Source: Penicillus capitatus
Taxonomy: Eukaryota; Plantae; Chlorophyta
Reading direction: 5' to 3'
Assembly: GCA_965649825.1 (NCBI GenBank)
Contig: OZ287707.1
Coordinates: 62,001 to 126,000 of the forward strand
Length of the DNA stretch: 64,000 bases
Shown here: positions 1,273-8,966 of the stretch, in pieces
Layout of the letters: each line of letters starts with the position of its first letter
Numbering within the stretch: the stretch's first letter is position 1
Program-made: the position numbers and the translations under genes
Notes under the pieces: model-generated
Database searches by the model: none
What the model was told of the DNA's origin: nothing
What the model saw: only the letters and a program-made list of their open reading frames with translations

Positions 1273-2127
1273 CTATGCATGGGCAGAACGTGCACCTGAC
1301 CTCAATCGTGTTGCTTTGAGCATCTTTCCTCTTTTTGCACTTCTTCCCACCGTCTCTTCCTAACAAGACCATAGATGCATCTTCAGAATACTGTCAACCG
1401 CAATGAAATGTTAAGGAGATGGCGAAAAGGGGCTCAGATGTAAAATATTTGTCGTCAAGCAAACTAAGCAACATCTCAGAGACTTCACTAGAGTCCATCA
1501 CAGCCCATGTCACTGTCCATACATACACCCATACCTCTTCTGGCTGAACGGGCTGCTCCTTTTCACAGAGAATCAATTCGATGTGAGCAGGTGAAGACAT
1601 GTATGGATTGATTCTTCCGTGTGCTCTGTACGTCCTTCTCCTCTGCTTCATCGCCCGGTTACACTGAATGTGATAGACGTACAGATTTTCGATGTCCAAC
1701 CCTTTCAACTAACACCATCCAATATTGCAAGACATGTCGACAGAGACACAAGATCGCACTTCTGCATTACTCTCGGCATTCTTGAGAAGGTTCAGGATGA
1801 TCTTGACAGCTTTGACGGGCCAACGTCCCTGTCCAGTGGTACTCCCCTCGTTCTTGGCCTGAGAGGTTCTCCCGACTCCACCGCAGTAACGGCGGAAAGG
1901 AATACAACGTTTGTGCTCCAGAACCGCTTCGAGGTATTTCTTCGCCTTATCGAGCGGCAGATCCTTGATCGCTTTGCCCGTTTCACGTGCTGTCTTAAAC
2001 CGCACTCGAGAATCTGATCCTCGTGCCTGAAACGAGGCCCATCGATTTGTTGACGCCCACAAACGAACGAACACACTTTACACGCTTTCGTCGGGTGAGG
2101 CGGATCGGCTGCGTAAGTCTTTCCCAT
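1273..2127 (-). CDS. RPL17: 60S ribosomal protein L17 (uL22), 4 exons
   Basis: Spliced product [17 protein letters not shown]|[33 protein letters not shown]|[30 protein letters not shown]..|[21 protein letters not shown] introns include 2027-2076 and 1360-1534. Confidence 0.95.
1430..1506 (-). ncRNA. Candidate intronic box C/D snoRNA
   Basis: In the 175-nt RPL17 intron: GGGCT-[C box GTGATGG]..[D' CTGA]..[C' TGACGA]..[D CTGA]-GCCC. The ends form a GGGCT/AGCCC stem; length 77 nt. Confidence 0.7.
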
Positions 2128-2196
2128 TCTCGACGCCGCCACTCAAATGGAATGGGTCAATTGAAGATGACGTACACAACGACGACAACGGACAGA

Positions 2197-3438
2197 ATGC
2201 GTGTTGCCTTTTGCCATCCAGATTTGGGATTGGGTGGCGCAGAGCGTCTTGTCGTCGACGCTGCACTGGAGATACAAGCGCATGGACATCAGGTCGAGAT
2301 TTTTACAGCGCACTACGACCCTGAGCGATGTTTCGCCGAAACAAGGAACGGCCAACTGCCTCCCATTCGGGTCCATGGAGACTGGCTGCCCAGACACCTC
2401 TTTGGAAAGGGACATGCCTTGTTTGCAAGCTTGCGTTGTTTAATTGTGGCTCTGGCCATTTGCAGAAGCCATCTTTCATTTGACGCTGCCTTTGTGGATC
2501 AGGTTTCAACAGTCCTTCCAGTATTCAGATTCCTCAGGCCGTCGATGAAAACACTGTTCTACTGCCACTTCCCAGACCTCCTGCTCTCAAAGAAGGGAGG
2601 TTGGCTTAAACGTCTGTACCGATGGCCATTGGATGCCTTAGAACAATGGACAACGGGTCAGGCAGATCTCGTGGTCGTCAACAGCGCCTTCACTGCAGAT
2701 GTCTTCGCTCAGACCTTTGCTCGATTGCACAGGAGAGGCATTCGACCTGCCATTCTGCATCCAGCTGTACAGATTCCTTCTCAAGAACAACTGACAGATG
2801 CGGATCATTCCTGGAGAGATGAGTTACCCCGAGAACTTGTTCAATTCCTCGAAAGGCCACAGACTGTTACATTCCTTTCCATCAATCGGTTTGAGAGAAA
2901 GAAGAAGATCGAACTTGCGCTCCATTCTCTGCATGACCTTCTCTCTCGGCACACGGAGAGAACACCACAGCTCATTCTTGCTGGAGGCTATGATGCACGT
3001 GTGATGGAAAATGTCAAGCACCTGGAGGAGCTGAAGGCCCTTACTAGGGAACTTAAGTTAGAGGCCTCTGTTTACTTCTTCCCGTCCTTTACTGATCGAC
3101 AGAAGTCCCTTTTGCTTTCTGCCTGTACTGCCGTTCTATACACACCACCCAATGAGCATTTCGGAATTGTCCCGCTAGAGAGTATGGCTTTTGGCTGTCC
3201 AGTCATCGCGTGCCATTCTGGAGGGCCCATCGAAAGCATTGTCCATGGTCAAACTGGATTCCTTGCAGCACCAAAGGCCGATGCTTTTGCCAAACACATG
3301 GAACAAATGTGTCAGATGGATCTAAAAGAAATGGATGAAGCAGGACGCATACACGTCCAAAAGAACTTCTCAAGAGCCATTTTTGGACAGCAACTGGTAG
3401 GAATGCTCACAACCATTGTACAGAAGAAACGACAGTGA
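2197..3438 (+). CDS. ALG2: Alpha-1,3/1,6-mannosyltransferase ALG2, intronless
   Basis: MRVAFCHPDLGLGGAERLVVDAA, FYCHFPD, FLSINRFERKK, GGYD.RV.EN, YTPPNEHFGIVPLESM. Confidence 0.95.
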   Translation: MRVAFCHPDLGLGGAERLVVDAALEIQAHGHQVEIFTAHYDPERCFAETRNGQLPPIRVHGDWLPRHLFGKGHALFASLRCLIVALAICRSHLSFDAAFVDQVSTVLPVFRFLRPSMKTLFYCHFPDLLLSKKGGWLKRLYRWPLDALEQWTTGQADLVVVNSAFTADVFAQTFARLHRRGIRPAILHPAVQIPSQEQLTDADHSWRDELPRELVQFLERPQTVTFLSINRFERKKKIELALHSLHDLLSRHTERTPQLILAGGYDARVMENVKHLEELKALTRELKLEASVYFFPSFTDRQKSLLLSACTAVLYTPPNEHFGIVPLESMAFGCPVIACHSGGPIESIVHGQTGFLAAPKADAFAKHMEQMCQMDLKEMDEAGRIHVQKNFSRAIFGQQLVGMLTTIVQKKRQ

Positions 3439-3477
3439 TGGACGGATCTGCCAAAATTACACGCGAGGTCTCCTTGT

Positions 3478-6079
3478 TCAGTGTTTCTTGGCCTTCTTCT
3501 TGGTGCGATTTTCGAGTCGTCTTCTCCGAGCTTCTTCTTTTCTCAGCTTTTCGAGTCGCAAATTCTTGATGCGACGTCGACTGTCACCTTCAAGATCATC
3601 CCAGTCGAAGGAGAGTTCCTTATCCTCCTGAACAGACGCCCATCCTTCAAATTCCTGAATTCGAATGTCTGTCTTTCCATTCCTCAAGTAATTGGTGCAG
3701 AGGGATCTGCTCAGACGGAACAATATCACATAAAACCAAGAAACAGAACAAACCTCAGTACTGCCGGATCGGCTCTTTGTTTCTCAGGTGTCCCAACGAT
3801 CAGTCCATGCACTCGCAGTCCGAGCTTTTCCTTGGCTCCTGAGAGCTTCCGCATGATATCAGTTCCTGGTTGTCGCAGTTCCCCGTCTGACACGAGAAGA
3901 ATGTCAGAATTCGCCCATTTGGCATCGGTCAATCTACATGGACACGACAGAGCTTCACAACAATGACAACGACATGACTGCAAGAAAGACCGATCAAGGC
4001 ATCGCTTGACAGGCTCGTTGAAATCTGATCCTCCGTTGAAGACCTTTTCAAGGAACTCCAGAAGGTTGTTAACACTCTTCATATCCTGATTTAATTCGAG
4101 TTCCCTCACCTATGACGGGCACATTTCCATCGTGTGCCCTATCGCCAGGCATTCTGCAATGAAGGAACCTCTTGCGGACCGGAGAATGCAAAGACGTAGC
4201 ATCCACGATCTTGTTCTTTTGCTGCTCTCATGCACTCTAGTGTCAGCGCTTTGGCAACTATCTCCCTGGGGCCCTGCCGTGTATACCAATGACATCTATG
4301 ATTCGCGAGACTTATTAGATTGCCTGCATGGATCCAGATGTGTCGACACAGAGTAGAATGGGACCTCTGTCTGCCGTCGGGCGAATCTCTCTTCTCTCCG
4401 GGATGATGTTGGTTGGATACTCGCCCCATCCGTCACGCTCGTATGTCGACAACGCTTTTTCTGCCAGTTTTGAGTAAAAGAGTAACTTTGCTTGGCGTAT
4501 GTGACGTCCTCTGGCAATCAGAGCAGACTCGGCCGGAAGCAACCGAGAGATGTCGTCCGATCGTGTCAGACCTCGTGTCTCCTGTTGCTCGAGAACTGTA
4601 CGTAACAGTCCATCGCGTCCTTTTGGATCGAAGAATTGAATGGGAGCGCGCCTGAGAGGACCCCATCCGCCACCTCTTCCCAGGGAACGTACCAGATCAC
4701 GCAACTCCTGCACAACGACATCAGGAGAGTTTATTACTGTCAACATCGCCGAGAGAAACGTGCCTTGAGATTCTCGAGCTTTCTTCTGAGTTCGTCCATA
4801 TGTGTCCAGCCCTTGCGACTCCACATGTTCCCAGATAATTCGAACACTCCAGAACGGCCACCTCCCAGTAGAACTTCCAGTCCTTCGAAGGCCCTTCCTG
4901 CCTGTGAAGAGGAAAATTCTTCAGATCCATTTGAGGGAATCCAATGATGCCTTTTCTAATGTGCTGATCGGATTGGCCCATTGTTGATAGAGCTCTTTAA
5001 CAGCAGTGATCGCTGCTTTCTTTTCAATTGGCAATCCAGCCAGCGGATCCTTCTTAGGTTTCTTTGCCTTGGCCACCACTTTCTGAGCTTCTTCTGGAAG
5101 CTCTTGTGCCAATCTCGCTGCAGAGGTAATATCAGCATTCATCAGCCAGACCGGTCGGTAATTAGTGTGGATAGAATCACACCTGCTCGCTGCTCTTTTT
5201 CTTTCTGCTTTATTTCCTTCCAGGACATGTATGCATTTCCGTGAACATCTTTTTCTACTTCCGTTTCCTCCTCGGGGATCCTGTTTGTGCCGTTTAAACT
5301 TCCCATGGGGTTTCCACTATTGATCGCACTTACTCAAGGACAATCCTATAGTACTTGCAGACGCACTGGATGATGCTGAGAATAAGAGCTTCCAGCACTC
5401 CAGGATATTTCTTTGCAAAACGTGCAGCCCCCAACTTCGCCAAACCTCTGGGAATGAAACGCAACACCGTTGCATCTGATGATTAAGAAAGGTGGCAACA
5501 AGCAAATTCGAACACCTTTGAAGTGTTTCTCTTAGCGGTTCAGGTGGCCACCGAAGTTCTCCGACTGCCCTTTCTGCCAAAACAGATTCGTTCTCGTGGA
5601 TGAGCTGTTTCAATGTCTCGTCATCTGGCAGCAGTCCGCGCTCCAAAGATTTCTATACATTGATCTCCGCCCTCGTCAAAGTGTCAATGACCGTCGGCTA
5701 TACCCGCCAAGTGGATAATCCCAATGCACTTTCCTGAATGGCAGGACTCGAATCCCCATGCTCGTTCGACCTGAGATCGACACCGTTGAAAACCGAGCCA
5801 CCACGGAGATACTTGTTATTGCGACCGTATGTGAGCCAATCGAAGGATCCAAGGCAGATGGGACGTGTTGATTTCTCCAAGCTGCCCCAGTCCTTGAACC
5901 AATGCATAATGTCCTCCTTCTGTGATCCCTTTAGCCGTTTGCTGAACGACTGCCGCGTTATGGACACGCAGAAACGAACGCTGACGACATCTGTTTCTGG
6001 AGCAATGTCGGATCGAAACAGGTGTCCTTAATCCGACGCCCTTCAGAAGAGGGGATCGGAGACTCTGCACGTCGAACAT
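3478..6079 (-). CDS. viaA: ViaA-like von Willebrand A (MIDAS) protein with N-terminal targeting-like extension; alternative start 6121
   Basis: Spliced: GLTRSDDISRLLPAE..LLFYSKLAEKALSTY..GPILLCVDTSGSMQ|GPREIVAKAL..CYVFAFS..FNGGSDF..KWANSDILLVSDGE..LGLRVHGLIVG. This matches the ViaA architecture. Three GC-AG introns (4274-4323, 4708-4763, 4902-4950). Confidence 0.85.
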
Positions 6080-6159
6080 CAGAGACGTGAGATCGCGAGA
6101 TCGTGTCTCTGCATGTCCCATCGTCTTGGCATTGCGTTCCGCAGATCTTACCGCAGAGG
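6080..6159. promoter_or_regulatory. Putative bidirectional promoter and 5'UTRs shared by viaA-like and ravA-like genes
   Basis: Only 80 nt (38 nt with the 6121 start) between divergent ATGs. 7-bp inverted repeat CAGAGAC 6080-6086 / GTCTCTG 6105-6111 encloses GAGATCG x2. Confidence 0.5.
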
Positions 6160-7973
6160 ATGATGCACCGTGGAACCCTCACGGCTTCGAGCCGTGTCAT
6201 CTTCGCCTCTCAGCCACGCTACGTTGCTCACCGATGGATATCGCCAACTGGATTCGCGCGACGCATTGGGTCGATACACAGACGACCTGTTGAGCCATTT
6301 CCTGTCAGAGAGAGCTCAAGTGGCGACGTGATCTGCCAGGCAGTGAAATCGGCAGAAGCTGGAGAGCAACTGGATGAAGCAGCCATGCAGCTGATTTCAG
6401 AAATTAGCAGCTCTGCGGATACCTATGTCAAGGATCTCGCTCAACAACATCTGGATGCGACGAAACAAGAATCCACGTTGCTTCCCGAATCCACTGAACT
6501 TCGTAATAAAGTGATGAAGTCGATTCTCGATCTGCAGAACGGACTGCTCGAACGCGAAACGGAAGTTCGTTTGCTGCTATTGGCTGCATTGTGCGGAGAG
6601 CACCTGCTTCTGTTGGGACCCCCAGGTTTGCTTCTTACTTAAAGGCAGATCCGATGAATGCTCTGATTTGAAGGAACTGCCAAATCTGAGCTGTCGAGAA
6701 GACTGAGCTCTCTCTGTGGTGGGAAATACTTCGAACGCCTTCTGACGCGATTCTCAGTTCCCGAGGAACTCTTCGGACCTCTGTCCATGAAAGGTCTGTC
6801 AAAGGACATATATTTTCGCTGTTGACTGCATGTTATTCTTGAAAGGGTTGGAGAATGATCTGTACATTCGACAAATCGATGGGTATTTGCCAACAGCTGA
6901 GGTGGCCTTCATCGACGAAATCTTCAAAGCCAATTCAGCTATTCTCAATGCTCTTCTCACACTTTTGAATGAACGGTGAGATTGTGCGTTTATCACACAA
7001 AAGATTGATCGCCTTTGTCAGATTGTTTGATAATGGAAATGAGCGTCTACCTGTGCCTCTGCTTTGTCTTGTTGGCGCTTCTAATGAACTGCCAGAGAGT
7101 GAAGAATTGGATGCCCTTTACGATCGGTTCTTGATTCGACGACAAGTCTCGCAGGTTACAAGCGGCCAGTTGCCCAAACTGGCACGCTTGGCTGCTGGCA
7201 GAGAGGGGTTTGCAGATGCCTCGTTATCTTCCGATTCAGGTGACGCTTTTGATTTGGATGATGTCCAAGATCTCTCCCTGGAAGACTTCAAATCTGTCGC
7301 TTCACTCGCCTACCAGGCTGTCGATGTACCTGAGACTGTGATCGACATCCTGACATCCCTCAGAGATTATCTGCAGGACAAATGCGAACCTCCAATTTAT
7401 GTATCGGACCGAAGATTCATGAAAGCAGTACAAACACTTCAAGTGGCTGCCCATTCCGACGGACGTGTGGAAGTGAATGAGTATGACTGTCTCCTGCTGG
7501 AACATGTGTTTGGCAATCGACCTGACGATGCACAGAAAGTGAAGAGCTATGTGATCGAGACCATCGCCTCGGATCCTGGATTGCAGCAATCGATGCTAGT
7601 CTTTCTGGGACTCTTCGGGAGAGCCTGCAGAATTCTCGAATCGGCATCCTACGATGAACTTCCTGAGGTCCGAGGGGAATTGGCGTCTCTGGTTGACTTG
7701 TTGAAATCCAGGCATCAAGCATTGACATCTAATCTGGAAGGCCAGTACCCAGAACTCCGAAGAACTGTATGGCAGAGCGAAGCAACAGTCCAAGCAGCCA
7801 TCCAGGCATTGACGCCTCAGATGACAGAGAACAAGAAGAAGGTGATCGACTTGCTGAAGGAGATTGCGACAGTGAACTGCTGTCTGGAGAAGAACGTATC
7901 GAGTGGCGTGCTGGAAAAGCTCTTGCCCAAACGCTACAAACAGTACAAGAAGGGCATTTCAGGCGAAACGTAG
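6160..7973 (+). CDS. ravA: RavA-like MoxR-family AAA+ ATPase with N-terminal targeting-like extension, 4 exons
   Basis: [28 protein letters not shown]|TAKS (Walker A), [48 protein letters not shown] (Walker B), [15 protein letters not shown]. Three GT-AG introns of about 46-51 nt. Confidence 0.9.
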
Positions 7974-8031: not shown

Positions 8032-8966
8032 CTAACATGAAGGCCCTCCAAACAGCTCTAACAGCGCATCTGTCACTTCTGAGGCATCTGGATCTGTCAC
8101 AGGATCAGGAATCGGTTCGATTTGAGTGTAGGATCTCTCATCCTTAGGCTTGCCAGCATTGTGCTGTCGTCCACTCTGCACACAGACAGCCATTGAGTCA
8201 GTCCCACGCATCTACTCTGTTGAAGGCACATTTTCCATTCTTTTGGCAGCTTGCATGCGATTCATATAGACTTCTTGTTGTTTCTTTGCATCTGCCAGTT
8301 CCTGTTGGATCTCTCTCTGATACAGCATCTTTCTATAGCCTGCACAGAAGATGTTTGAATGCTTTGGAGCACAGGCAATGCGACGTACGGATCCCTTCCA
8401 ACAGATGATCCCATTTGAACTTCGACAAGTATTTGACACACCAGATCTCTTCATAGAAGGGATTGTGTTTCTTGCCGCCGATTGACTCTCCATTGTAACG
8501 CCGGACGAACTTCTTGGCAATCTTCTTGTCCATAAACTCCACCCATCCCTCCACATAGCCTCGTTTCTGCCACCCTCCATTCCGTTTGCGTTCTTGATAG
8601 TCCTCCACATCTGAATGCAGATAAAGAACAGACACATCTTCAATGTCTCCGAAGAATACTCCCAAGACACCTTCTGTGGCAAAGTGTATTCTGCCAATCG
8701 CACCGTACTCGCCCAATATCCGACGACATATTCGCGGATTCTGTCCCAAGAATTCTCAAAGACGGTGTGACACGAACGCTCTATCGCACCATTCTTGGAG
8801 GTATTCGGCCCAGATAGACAATTCCTAAAGCAAATGGACTCCTTTCCGTTCTCTGCCCCCGTCGGTTCTAGGCGAGAAAAACCATACCTCTGTTCTCGAA
8901 GCTCTTCTTCACGATCTCGAGATTCTTCTTCGAGAATCGTTTCTTGCGTTTCTTCTTTCCATCCAT
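8032..8966 (-). CDS. ESF2: Pre-rRNA processing factor ESF2/ABT1 (RRM)
   Basis: Spliced GIVYLGRIPPRM|NPRICRRILGEYGAIGRI..YVEGWVEFMDKKIAK..IGGKKHNPFYEEIWCVKYLSKFKWDHL. Confidence 0.9.

What the first reader, a model, noticed from the sequence alone, without database searches (positions are those of the whole stretch)
3478..7973. Eukaryotic RavA-ViaA chaperone module: MoxR AAA+ ATPase and its VWA partner as a divergent gene pair
Seen: a RavA-type AAA+ gene and a ViaA-type VWA gene with intact Walker A/B and MIDAS (DTSGS) motifs, both carrying spliceosomal introns, with start codons 38-80 nt apart. Established: MoxR ATPases work with a VWA adaptor. In E. coli ravA-viaA is an operon linked to fumarate reductase and Nuo Fe-S subunits and to aminoglycoside sensitivity, and RavA binds LdcI through its LARA domain. 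Inferred: the bacterial operon has been rebuilt as a eukaryotic bidirectional unit, which suggests selection for co-expression. I see no LARA-like segment here, so the client should differ. I know of no characterised algal RavA-ViaA system, but cannot search to confirm that.
Basis: partly seen in the sequence, partly recalled or inferred. Interest (0 to 1): 0.9.

Follow-up and report, generated by a model that had tools for sequence, protein, structure and literature searches.

The report
Algal RavA–ViaA chaperone gene pair
A green alga carries intron-containing nuclear copies of the bacterial RavA ATPase and its ViaA partner, placed head-to-head 38 bases apart; this arrangement is conserved across distant green algae and replaced by a single fused protein in other algae, and the pair probably works in the chloroplast.

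Summary
Window 3478-6121 (-) encodes a 677-aa ViaA-like VWA protein (12 exons). Window 6160-7973 (+) encodes a 555-aa RavA-like MoxR AAA+ ATPase (4 exons). The two ATGs are 38 nt apart. E. coli RavA and ViaA are the closest characterised relatives (39% and 32% identity). Both proteins score far below the NCBIfam equivalog cut-offs, and the ATPase lacks the LARA and RavA_C domains.

New here:
- The head-to-head pair also occurs in Bryopsis, Myrmecia and Chloropicon with different flanking genes. It is linked in Picocystis and unlinked in Chlamydomonas and a marine picoeukaryote contig (probably Mamiellales).
- Euglena, Mallomonas and dinoflagellates encode both partners as one ViaA→RavA polypeptide.
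- Both partners form single eukaryotic clades. Their nearest bacterial relatives (planctomycetes, myxobacteria, proteobacteria) carry ravA→viaA operons and also lack LARA.
- Three fused proteins (Mallomonas and two unnamed relatives) start with plastid-type bipartite presequences.
- A published Chlamydomonas insertion in the ViaA orthologue (Cre03.g207400) grows poorly without acetate and has Fv/Fm near 0.

Best reading: an organelle-targeted, most probably plastid, MoxR–VWA remodelling chaperone that supports photosynthesis. Its client is unknown. It is a new variant of a known kind.

The parts
3478..6121 (-). ViaA-like VWA gene: 12 exons (5826-6121, 5704-5770, 5516-5652, 5334-5447, 5183-5280, 4951-5117, 4764-4901, 4324-4707, 4169-4273, 3991-4109, 3754-3933, 3478-3706), 677 aa
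   Evidence: Gene model, with junctions checked against orthologues. NCBIfam ViaA 1.6e-36. Pfam VWA_2. 32% identity to E. coli ViaA. 69% identity to Bryopsis BSKO_01512 over the A3 alignment.
6160..7973 (+). RavA-like MoxR AAA+ ATPase gene: 4 exons (6160-6625, 6674-6793, 6846-6975, 7022-7973), 555 aa
   Evidence: Gene model. Pfam bpMoxR, AAA_5 and AAA_lid_8. NCBIfam RavA 3.8e-67. PDB sequence hits are RavA only. Best Foldseek match is RavA.
6122..6159 (.). 38-nt spacer between the two divergent start codons; presumed shared bidirectional promoter/5'UTR region
   Evidence: Read directly from the sequence. Spacer and both ATGs are conserved in the 93%-identical relative L093. Promoter function is inferred, not shown.
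6616..6687 (+). Walker A GPPGTAKS, interrupted by intron 1 (6626-6673)
   Evidence: invariant in 14 orthologues.
6905..6925 (+). Walker B (AFIDEIF; D219 and E220 at 6914-6919)
   Evidence: invariant in orthologues.
4330..4344 (-). MIDAS motif DTSGS (D461-S465) of the VWA domain
   Evidence: D461, S463 and S465 are invariant in 26 orthologues.
3637..4362 (-). VWA domain (residues about 455-625, including introns)
   Evidence: Pfam VWA_2 at residues 458-566 of the first gene model, about two residues lower in the final 677-aa model. AF2 model has pLDDT 80-90 here. Foldseek finds VWA folds.
4675..5915 (-). All-alpha N-terminal domain of the ViaA-like protein (residues about 70-350, including introns)
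   Evidence: AF2 helices H71-H349, mostly pLDDT 80-95. This corresponds to the alpha-helical NTV of E. coli ViaA (PMC9489729). Sequence similarity to E. coli ViaA begins only at its residue 211.
3484..3594 (-). Arg/Lys-rich C-terminal helix of the ViaA-like protein (residues 640-676)
   Evidence: AF2 helix H640-676. It is analogous in position and charge to the Arg-rich C-terminal helix of E. coli ViaA, which binds phosphatidic acid and cardiolipin (PMC9489729). Any function here is inferred.
7521..7955 (+). All-helical C-terminal domain of the RavA-like protein (residues 406-550); no LARA insert
   Evidence: AF2 pLDDT about 85-95, helices only. No Pfam LARA_dom or ATPase_RavA_C hit (compared). 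BLAST with the LARA segment is negative.
6160..6339 (+). N-terminal presequence of the RavA-like protein (about 60 aa; basic, Ser/Thr-rich, poorly conserved)
   Evidence: AF2 pLDDT below 40. Organelle targeting is inferred.
5918..6121 (-). N-terminal presequence of the ViaA-like protein (about 68 aa)
   Evidence: Variable, Arg/Ser/Ala-rich extensions in all orthologues; AF2 pLDDT below 40. Organelle targeting is inferred.

Best explanation
These are two nuclear genes of a green alga, probably an ulvophyte near Bryopsidales. They encode the two subunits of a RavA-ViaA-type MoxR/VWA remodelling chaperone.

Origin. The pair descends from a bacterial ravA-viaA operon of a LARA-less type. It was acquired once, early in algal evolution, and no cyanobacterium appeared among the closest relatives sampled.

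Proposed mechanism.
- Both proteins carry N-terminal presequences and are imported into an organelle, most probably the plastid.
- The ATPase forms an AAA+ ring.
- The ViaA-like partner docks on the ring through its helical N-terminal domain.
- It grips a client through the metal-ion site (MIDAS) of its VWA domain.
- Its basic C-terminal helix may hold it at an anionic membrane or nucleic-acid surface.
- ATP hydrolysis then remodels the client. By analogy with other MoxR-VWA pairs, the client would be a metalloprotein or membrane complex that needs assembly, cofactor insertion or repair.
- Published Chlamydomonas mutant data point to the photosynthetic apparatus, possibly photosystem II.

Gene arrangement. 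The head-to-head layout shares one very short control region and keeps the partners co-expressed. Other algae reach the same end by fusing them into one polypeptide.

Shown here: homology of both partners, intact motifs, gene structure, conserved adjacency, the fusions, and single eukaryotic clades.
Inferred: complex formation, import, plastid location, client class and co-regulation.
For: Homology and motifs.

Bacterial ancestry:
- The 80 best bacterial loci have 45-56% identity. 68 of them have a viaA-like gene directly downstream on the same strand.
- The algal ViaA-like protein is 34% identical over 353 aa to a planctomycete ViaA-like protein.

Single eukaryotic clades in NJ trees: RavA-like 77% bootstrap (green algae 99%); ViaA-like 96% (green algae 80%).

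Conserved head-to-head pair with unrelated flanking genes: Bryopsis, Chloropicon, Myrmecia. Picocystis has the genes linked but convergent.

Rosetta-stone fusions: proteins of about 880-1440 aa match almost the whole length of both algal profiles, in the order ViaA then RavA. They occur in Euglena (N-terminally truncated transcript, 879 aa), Mallomonas, Polarella and Effrenium, and some come from transcripts.

Plastid location:
- The fused proteins P0338 (Mallomonas), P0336 and P0345 begin with a hydrophobic signal peptide followed by Phe at +1 (VES|F, SIS|F, TNS|F). This is the rule for ochrophyte plastid import (sequences; the rule is from my own knowledge of Kilian and Kroth 2005 and ASAFind).
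- All named eukaryotic hits are plastid-bearing algae.
- Green-algal N-termini are basic, hydroxylated and almost free of acidic residues.

Link to photosynthesis:
- The Chlamydomonas ViaA orthologue Cre03.g207400 (identified) is a 'higher-confidence photosynthesis candidate'.
- Mutant CAL010_01_24 has one simple insertion, in this gene only. It grows like wild type on acetate (5/5/5) but scores 3 and 2 on minimal medium. Its Fv/Fm is 0, 0.127 and 0.
- A second allele (T39-3) exists, and the gene is flagged as co-expressed with photosynthesis genes (PMC8448359). The insertion coordinates fall inside the gene as placed in L002.

Chloroplast proteomics: a Chlamydomonas 'moxR ATPase' (Cre13.g603225) is annotated as chloroplast. 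It associates with chloroplast ribosomes after 180 min of heat (PMC8894945). It is detected together with Cre03.g207400 in chloroplast TurboID data (PMC10602608 supplements).

E. coli precedent for the domain roles: PMC9489729.
Against: - PredAlgo predicts 'M' (mitochondrion) for Cre03.g207400 and ChloroP predicts no transit peptide. I had no targeting predictor, and green-algal presequences do not separate plastid from mitochondrion by eye.
- Genetic linkage and complementation were not reported for CAL010_01_24. The collection shows 88% linkage overall.
- I could not verify by sequence that Cre13.g603225 is the RavA-like orthologue.
- The pair is unlinked in many green algae, so adjacency is dispensable.
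- The trees are neighbour-joining on about 300 columns, and the bacterial sister group is unresolved.
- The AF2 model of the AAA+ core is of low confidence.
- No client has been identified.
Confidence: 0.6

Rival explanations
1. Same RavA-ViaA-type chaperone, but imported into mitochondria. There it would act on respiratory complexes I or II, the homologues of the E. coli Nuo and Frd clients.
For: - In E. coli, RavA-ViaA is tied to Nuo and fumarate reductase (PMC3893208 and PMC10585395, abstracts).
- PredAlgo gives 'M' for Cre03.g207400.
- Green-algal presequences are ambiguous between the two organelles.
Against: - The fused proteins P0338 (Mallomonas), P0336 and P0345 carry a signal peptide plus Phe, a plastid-type bipartite presequence.
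- Named eukaryotic hits are all plastid-bearing lineages.
- The Chlamydomonas mutant grows like wild type in the dark on acetate, where respiration is required, but has Fv/Fm near 0.
- Chloroplast AP-MS and TurboID detect these proteins.
Confidence: 0.15
2. The two proteins are real homologues, but the head-to-head adjacency is a passive relic in a very compact genome. It would carry no regulatory meaning, and the proteins might act independently.
For: - Intergenic distances in this window are tiny in general. Only 39 nt separate the stop codons at 3438 and 3478.
- The genes are unlinked in Chlamydomonas, a marine picoeukaryote contig (probably Mamiellales) and many other green algae.
Against: - The same orientation is kept in three distant classes while the flanking genes differ.
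- The genes are linked in Picocystis.
- The partners are fused in at least four other algal lineages.
- Both genes are present in every species where either was named.
- An operon is the rule in bacteria.
Confidence: 0.1
3. The pair is part of an NTP-dependent conflict (immunity-like) system of the 'bpMoxR-vWA-beta-propeller' type, not a housekeeping chaperone.
For: The best Pfam hit of the ATPase is PF20030 bpMoxR, 5.3e-61.
Against: - E. coli RavA hits PF20030 just as strongly (191 bits), so this model does not separate the two kinds.
- No beta-propeller or other third component lies next to the pair here or in the four other algal loci.
- The genes carry organelle presequences and are strongly conserved (57% mean column identity). 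Searches listed one RavA-like hit per named species, although Myrmecia has a second, shorter ViaA-like paralogue.
Confidence: 0.05
4. Bacterial contamination or a very recent transfer mis-assembled into algal sequence.
For: The closest non-eukaryotic relatives are bacterial.
Against: - The two genes carry 14 spliceosomal introns.
- Eukaryotic genes lie on both sides.
- Orthologues with introns occur in dozens of assembled algal genomes.
Confidence: 0.01

Closest known systems
E. coli RavA-ViaA (MoxR AAA+ ATPase with its VWA partner)
   Same: - RavA-subfamily AAA+ module and lid: 39% identity, and the only PDB sequence hits.
- The partner has a helical N-terminal domain, a C-terminal MIDAS-containing VWA domain and a basic C-terminal helix.
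- The two genes are neighbours.
   Different: - Eukaryotic nuclear genes with introns and presequences.
- No LARA domain and no RavA_C domain detectable by sequence.
- The ViaA-like protein is about 200 aa longer. Its N-terminal two thirds have no detectable similarity to E. coli ViaA.
- The genes are divergent rather than co-directional.
- Scores lie far below the equivalog cut-offs.
- The client is probably photosynthetic rather than Nuo or Frd.
LARA-less RavA-like/ViaA-like operons of Planctomycetota, Myxococcota and gamma/beta-Proteobacteria (uncharacterised)
   Same: These are the closest sequence relatives of both partners: 45-56% identity for the ATPase and 34% for the partner. They share the same domain set, without LARA.
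   Different: They are co-directional operons without presequences or introns. The eukaryotic sequences form their own clades.
Fused ViaA-(Clp_N)-RavA proteins of Euglena, Mallomonas, Polarella and Effrenium (uncharacterised)
   Same: Both modules belong to the same eukaryotic clades as the window genes. They match the algal profiles over nearly their full length.
   Different: - They are one polypeptide, with ViaA N-terminal.
- Some carry a Clp_N repeat between the modules.
- P0338 (Mallomonas), P0336 and P0345 carry a signal peptide plus transit peptide.
Other MoxR-VWA pairs: CbbQ-CbbO (Rubisco activase), NorQ-NorD (nitric oxide reductase maturation), Mg-chelatase ChlI-ChlD
   Same: The same general principle applies: an AAA+ ring works with a MIDAS-VWA adaptor to remodel or metallate a specific enzyme (PMC5437159).
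   Different: - No sequence match at E<=1e-3 to CbbQ or NorQ structures.
- Foldseek finds NorQ only at E about 1e-2 and the Mg-chelatase ATPase subunit at about 1e-3.
- The 'Mg-chelatase subunit ChlD' labels on some metagenomic homologues are generic VWA annotations.

Membership tests
RavA (NCBIfam NF010054; E. coli RavA) | MoxR-class AAA+ module with intact Walker A/B, sensor and Arg residues, plus the AAA_lid_8 lid | tested here: met
   Pfam AAA_5 2e-25 and AAA_lid_8 6.7e-20. The motifs are invariant in 14 orthologues. The alignment to RavA residues 12-322 is continuous.
RavA (NCBIfam NF010054; E. coli RavA) | Closer to RavA than to other MoxR subfamilies | tested here: met
   RavA is the top NCBIfam hit by 60 orders of magnitude. 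The only PDB sequence hits are RavA. Foldseek gives RavA at 1e-10 to 1e-11, against MoxR 2r44 at 3e-4.
RavA (NCBIfam NF010054; E. coli RavA) | Whole-protein score at or above the equivalog cut-off (681 bits) | tested here: not met
   227.5 bits, covering model positions 5-314 of 498 only.
RavA (NCBIfam NF010054; E. coli RavA) | LARA domain (PF20265), which binds LdcI | tested here: not met
   No hit in the algal protein, whereas E. coli RavA scores 135 bits. BLAST with the LARA segment is negative. AF2 predicts only helices after residue 406.
RavA (NCBIfam NF010054; E. coli RavA) | RavA C-terminal domain (PF12592), the triple-helical bundle | tested here: inconclusive
   No Pfam hit (compared with 82.7 bits for E. 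coli). A confident helical bundle is predicted in the same place, and Foldseek aligned 482 columns to RavA chain 4upb_E.
RavA (NCBIfam NF010054; E. coli RavA) | Hexameric ATPase that binds ViaA in a nucleotide-dependent way | not testable with these tools
   Indirect support only: adjacency, co-occurrence and natural fusions.
ViaA (NCBIfam NF008230; E. coli ViaA) | C-terminal VWA domain with a MIDAS motif (DxSxS...T/S...D) | tested here: met
   D461, S463, S465 and D558 are invariant. The usual Thr is Ser here (GGSD) but Thr in Picocystis-type sequences. Pfam VWA_2 6.5e-9.
ViaA (NCBIfam NF008230; E. coli ViaA) | ViaA-specific segment upstream of the VWA domain (E. coli residues about 211-319) | tested here: met
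   The BLASTP alignment runs from ViaA 211 to 461 and includes the conserved SDDI-RLLP motif. The NCBIfam match covers model positions 188-453.
ViaA (NCBIfam NF008230; E. coli ViaA) | Whole-protein score at or above the equivalog cut-off (500 bits) | tested here: not met
   126.5 bits.
ViaA (NCBIfam NF008230; E. coli ViaA) | Alpha-helical N-terminal domain that binds RavA | tested here: inconclusive
   A confident all-alpha domain is predicted at residues 70-350. It has no sequence similarity to ViaA residues 1-210. Binding was not testable.
ViaA (NCBIfam NF008230; E. coli ViaA) | Arg-rich amphipathic C-terminal helix that binds anionic lipids | tested here: inconclusive
   An R/K-rich helix is predicted at 640-676. 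It is longer than the E. coli helix and not alignable to it. Lipid binding was not testable.
bpMoxR-vWA-beta-propeller ternary systems (Pfam PF20030) | A third, beta-propeller component encoded with the MoxR and vWA genes | tested here: not met
   No such gene lies next to the pair in the window or in Bryopsis, Chloropicon, Myrmecia or Picocystis. PF20030 also matches E. coli RavA, so the hit alone is not diagnostic.
Mg-chelatase ChlI/ChlD | ChlI-type AAA+ module; ChlD has an AAA+ module fused N-terminally to the VWA domain | tested here: not met
   The Mg_chelatase Pfam hit is marginal: 5.7e-4, covering 38 residues, below the cut-off. The VWA protein has no AAA+ module. Foldseek finds the Mg-chelatase ATPase subunit (6l8d, 1g8p) only at about 1e-3.

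The most novel reading that the evidence does not exclude
An ancient MoxR-VWA assembly and repair chaperone found across algae and imported into the plastid. It would have been acquired once as a ravA-viaA operon from a non-cyanobacterial bacterium. It was then kept as a head-to-head gene pair or fused into one protein, and it appears to be absent from land plants. It would be required for building or maintaining photosystem II, or another core photosynthetic complex, possibly co-translationally at chloroplast ribosomes under stress.
Probability: 0.3. Interest if true: 0.8.

Novelty: new variant of a known kind. Interest (0 to 1): 0.62.

Why it matters
The MoxR ATPase family is described as a family of bacteria and archaea (PMC3893208 abstract). 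The physiological client of RavA-ViaA is still debated even in E. coli. This finding matters for four reasons.

- It shows a eukaryotic branch of the RavA-ViaA pair that runs through green algae. A Prasinoderma homologue of the ATPase suggests it reaches back to the base of the green lineage.
- Evolution has tied the two partners together in two independent ways: a conserved bidirectional gene pair, and a gene fusion. This is unusually clear genomic evidence that they work as one machine.
- The pair connects to photosynthesis. Published Chlamydomonas mutants of the ViaA orthologue have a photosystem-II-like defect. This offers a tractable eukaryotic system, with an easy read-out, for finding what a RavA-ViaA machine actually does.
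- It may add an uncharacterised assembly or repair factor to algal chloroplast biology. No streptophyte appeared among the named hits, so land plants may lack it.

Tried and rejected
- My first ViaA-like gene model was wrong at two junctions: a false first intron and a 'SFLQ' insertion. I corrected it against orthologues.
- I tried to confirm that Chlamydomonas Cre13.g603225 ('moxR ATPase') is the RavA-like orthologue. The exact-sequence look-up of XP_001700689.1 found nothing. A third homology search seeded with it returned no v5-named Chlamydomonas entry. Supplements of PMC8894945, PMC8226298 and PMC7797057 held nothing useful. The identity stays unverified.
- Biopython's BLOSUM distance calculator timed out. 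I replaced it with Kimura-corrected p-distances.
- The PDB sequence search for the ViaA-like protein found nothing. Foldseek returned only generic VWA folds and told nothing about the N-terminal domain.
- Rfam and tRNA scans of the window found nothing.
- Literature searches for an algal or plastid RavA/ViaA/MoxR study returned only bacterial work and Rubisco-activase reviews. Dorrell et al. 2017 does not mention the family in its main text.
- Explanations rejected: Mg-chelatase, CbbQO/NorQD and contamination (see the membership tests and rival explanations).

Full report
WHAT IS THERE

The window is eukaryotic nuclear DNA of about 49% GC. It has very short introns and very short intergenic spacers.

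On the + strand, exons 6160-6625, 6674-6793, 6846-6975 and 7022-7973 give a 555-aa protein with three GT-AG introns of 46-52 nt.

On the - strand, twelve exons between 6121 and 3478 give a 677-aa protein. My first model was wrong at the first intron and at one later donor site. Alignment with orthologues exposed both errors, and I corrected them. Three of the eleven introns are GC-AG.

The two start codons are separated by 38 nt (6122-6159), or by 80 nt if Met15 of the minus-strand protein is the true start. A metagenomic relative with 93% identity keeps both ATGs and the spacer.

WHAT THE PROTEINS ARE

The plus-strand protein:
- It matches Pfam bpMoxR (5e-61), AAA_5 and AAA_lid_8 and NCBIfam RavA (3.8e-67).
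- Its only sequence matches in the PDB are E. coli RavA entries. E is about 6e-54, with query residues 117-438 aligned to RavA 12-322.
- Against E. coli K-12 RavA it is 39% identical over 314 residues.
- Foldseek with an AF2 model again puts RavA first, at 1e-10 to 1e-11.

The minus-strand protein:
- It matches VWA_2 and NCBIfam ViaA (1.6e-36).
- It is 32% identical to E. coli ViaA over 274 residues. The aligned stretch includes the ViaA-specific segment upstream of the VWA domain.
- Walker A/B and the MIDAS residues are invariant in orthologue alignments.

Both scores lie far below the NCBIfam equivalog cut-offs (227 against 681 bits; 126 against 500 bits). The ATPase has neither the LARA domain (PF20265) nor the RavA_C domain (PF12592), whereas E. 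coli RavA hits both. A BLAST with the LARA segment is negative. AF2 predicts a confident all-helical C-terminal domain.

The Pfam name 'bpMoxR' is not informative, because E. coli RavA matches that model equally well.

The ViaA-like model shows four parts:
- a disordered presequence;
- an all-alpha N-domain (residues 70-350);
- a VWA domain (455-625);
- a long Arg/Lys-rich C-terminal helix (640-676).

This resembles E. coli ViaA. There the helical N-domain binds RavA, and an Arg-rich C-terminal helix binds phosphatidic acid and cardiolipin (PMC9489729).

RELATIVES AND ORIGIN

Both proteins have orthologues of 55-76% identity in most sequenced Chlorophyta:
- Bryopsis, Ostreobium, Chlorella, Coccomyxa, Chlamydomonas, Volvox, Tetradesmus, Picochlorum and Chloropicon;
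- Picocystis;
- Prasinoderma, found for the ATPase only.

A few are already labelled 'ATPase RavA' by genome annotators. No streptophyte appeared among the named hits.

The best 80 bacterial loci have 45-56% identity over the AAA+ module. They come from Phycisphaerae and other Planctomycetota, Lujinxingia and other Myxococcota, Thiomargarita/Beggiatoa relatives and other gamma- and beta-proteobacteria.

In 68 of the 80 loci, a gene matching the algal ViaA-like profile (E 1e-31 to 1e-99) follows on the same strand. These bacterial proteins also lack LARA.

Neighbour-joining trees put all eukaryotic RavA-like sequences in one clade (77% bootstrap; green algae 99%). They put all eukaryotic ViaA-like sequences in one clade (96%; green algae 80%). 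The E. coli proteins sit on a long outgroup branch.

The simplest reading is one ancient transfer of a LARA-less ravA-viaA operon into an algal ancestor. This is an inference from modest trees.

THE GENE ARRANGEMENT

The head-to-head arrangement is not peculiar to this window.
- Bryopsis sp. KO-2023 has it, with 266 nt between the coding sequences.
- Chloropicon primus has it, with 477 nt.
- Myrmecia bisecta has it, with 710 nt.
- By gene-model coordinates, the species behind eukprot scf_2565 has it too.

The flanking genes differ in each case, so the pair itself is what has been retained.

In Picocystis the genes are convergent with one gene between them. In Chlamydomonas and in a marine picoeukaryote contig, probably Mamiellales, they are unlinked.

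The 38-nt distance itself is unremarkable for this genome. The convergent glycosyltransferase gene upstream stops 39 nt from the ViaA-like stop codon.

FUSIONS

The exhaustive representative search revealed long proteins of about 880-1440 aa. In these a ViaA-like half precedes a RavA-like half, and some have a Clp_N repeat between the halves.
- They come from Euglena gracilis (an N-terminally truncated 879-aa transcript), Mallomonas annulata, Polarella glacialis and Effrenium voratum, and from unnamed transcriptomes and metagenomes.
- They match nearly the full length of both algal profiles.
- They fall inside the eukaryotic clades.

This is a classical Rosetta-stone argument that the two window proteins act together.

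WHERE AND ON WHAT

Evidence for a plastid location and a role in photosynthesis:
- All green-algal orthologues carry variable, basic, Ser/Thr/Ala-rich N-terminal extensions with almost no acidic residues.
- Three fusion proteins start with a hydrophobic signal peptide followed by Phe at the predicted cleavage site. These are Mallomonas and two unnamed proteins that group with the Mallomonas and Euglena fusions in the trees (P0336, P0345). The pattern is the hallmark of import into ochrophyte plastids; the rule is recalled from the literature and no predictor was run.
- The Chlamydomonas ViaA orthologue Cre03.g207400 is one of 253 'higher-confidence photosynthesis candidate genes' (PMC8448359).
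- Mutant CAL010_01_24 has a single simple insertion, in this gene only. It grows like wild type on acetate, is impaired on minimal medium, and has Fv/Fm of 0, 0.127 and 0.
- A second allele exists, and the gene is flagged as co-expressed with photosynthesis genes.
- A Chlamydomonas 'moxR ATPase', Cre13.g603225, is listed as a chloroplast protein whose association with chloroplast ribosomes rises after 180 min of heat, alongside chaperonins (PMC8894945).
- Both it and Cre03.g207400 are detected in chloroplast TurboID experiments.

Evidence against, and gaps:
- I could not verify by sequence that Cre13.g603225 is the RavA-like orthologue.
- PredAlgo calls Cre03.g207400 mitochondrial.
- No complementation has been reported.

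MECHANISM

By homology with E. coli RavA-ViaA, and by the general logic of MoxR-VWA pairs (PMC5437159), I propose the following.
- An AAA+ ring forms.
- The ViaA-like adaptor docks on the ring through its helical domain.
- The adaptor holds a client through its MIDAS site, possibly at a membrane through its basic tail.
- ATP-driven remodelling then helps to assemble, metallate or repair the client.

The Chlamydomonas phenotype suggests a component of the photosynthetic electron-transfer chain, perhaps photosystem II. This step is inference.

COMPARISON AND NOVELTY

The system works like RavA-ViaA and belongs to the same subfamily in the broad sense. It fails the strict equivalog tests and lacks LARA. 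No paper in the library describes it.

I rate it a new variant of a known kind. The new elements are:
- the eukaryotic, organelle-targeted setting;
- the conserved bidirectional pair;
- the fusions in algae with secondary plastids;
- the link to photosynthesis.

Noticed in passing
window 3439-3477: Only 39 nt lie between the stop codon of the convergent glycosyltransferase ORF (2023-3438, +; ALG2-like by my reading, and its counterpart in L093 carries Glycos_transf_1/Glyco_transf_4 domains) and the stop codon of the ViaA-like gene. The 3'UTRs must overlap or be tiny, so the genome is extremely compact.
   Followed up: partly
window 4902-4950, 4708-4763, 4274-4323 (- strand): Three of the eleven introns of the ViaA-like gene have GC-AG boundaries. 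The junctions are confirmed by orthologue alignment. This share is unusually high.
   Followed up: partly
window 8032-8750 (- strand): ORF fragments downstream of the RavA-like gene look like an ESF2/ABT1-type RRM protein (my reading of the translation). Its end lies within about 60-250 nt of the RavA-like stop codon.
   Followed up: no
proteins P0330, P0331, P0326, P0351 (fusion proteins): A Clp_N (PF02861) repeat lies between the VWA and AAA+ modules, or upstream of the AAA+ module. It occurs in dinoflagellate and some unnamed algal versions but not in green algae. It hints at adaptor or substrate recognition of the Clp type.
   Followed up: partly
L046 755-3160: In a gammaproteobacterial MAG, one ORF matches both the RavA-like and the ViaA-like profile. 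It is either a bacterial fusion in the order RavA then ViaA (opposite to the eukaryotic fusions) or a frameshift in the assembly.
   Followed up: no
L018 1625-3913; L031 3293-4475: In Parabeggiatoa genomes, 1.2-2.3 kb separates the ravA-like and viaA-like genes. This suggests an inserted gene in the operon.
   Followed up: no
L001 12654-13601 (Bryopsis): A copine/vWA-TerF-like gene lies directly downstream of the RavA-like gene. It is not seen at the other algal loci and is probably a coincidence.
   Followed up: no
protein P0240 (Myrmecia bisecta): A second, shorter ViaA-like paralogue (46% identity over about half the query) lies on a different contig from the head-to-head pair.
   Followed up: no
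L093 (ENA ERZ26696514, 2.2-Mb contig): This is a eukaryotic algal contig inside a metagenome assembly. It is 93% identical to the window at this locus and has the same upstream glycosyltransferase. A prokaryotic gene caller annotated it, so the intron-containing genes appear as fragments.
   Followed up: partly
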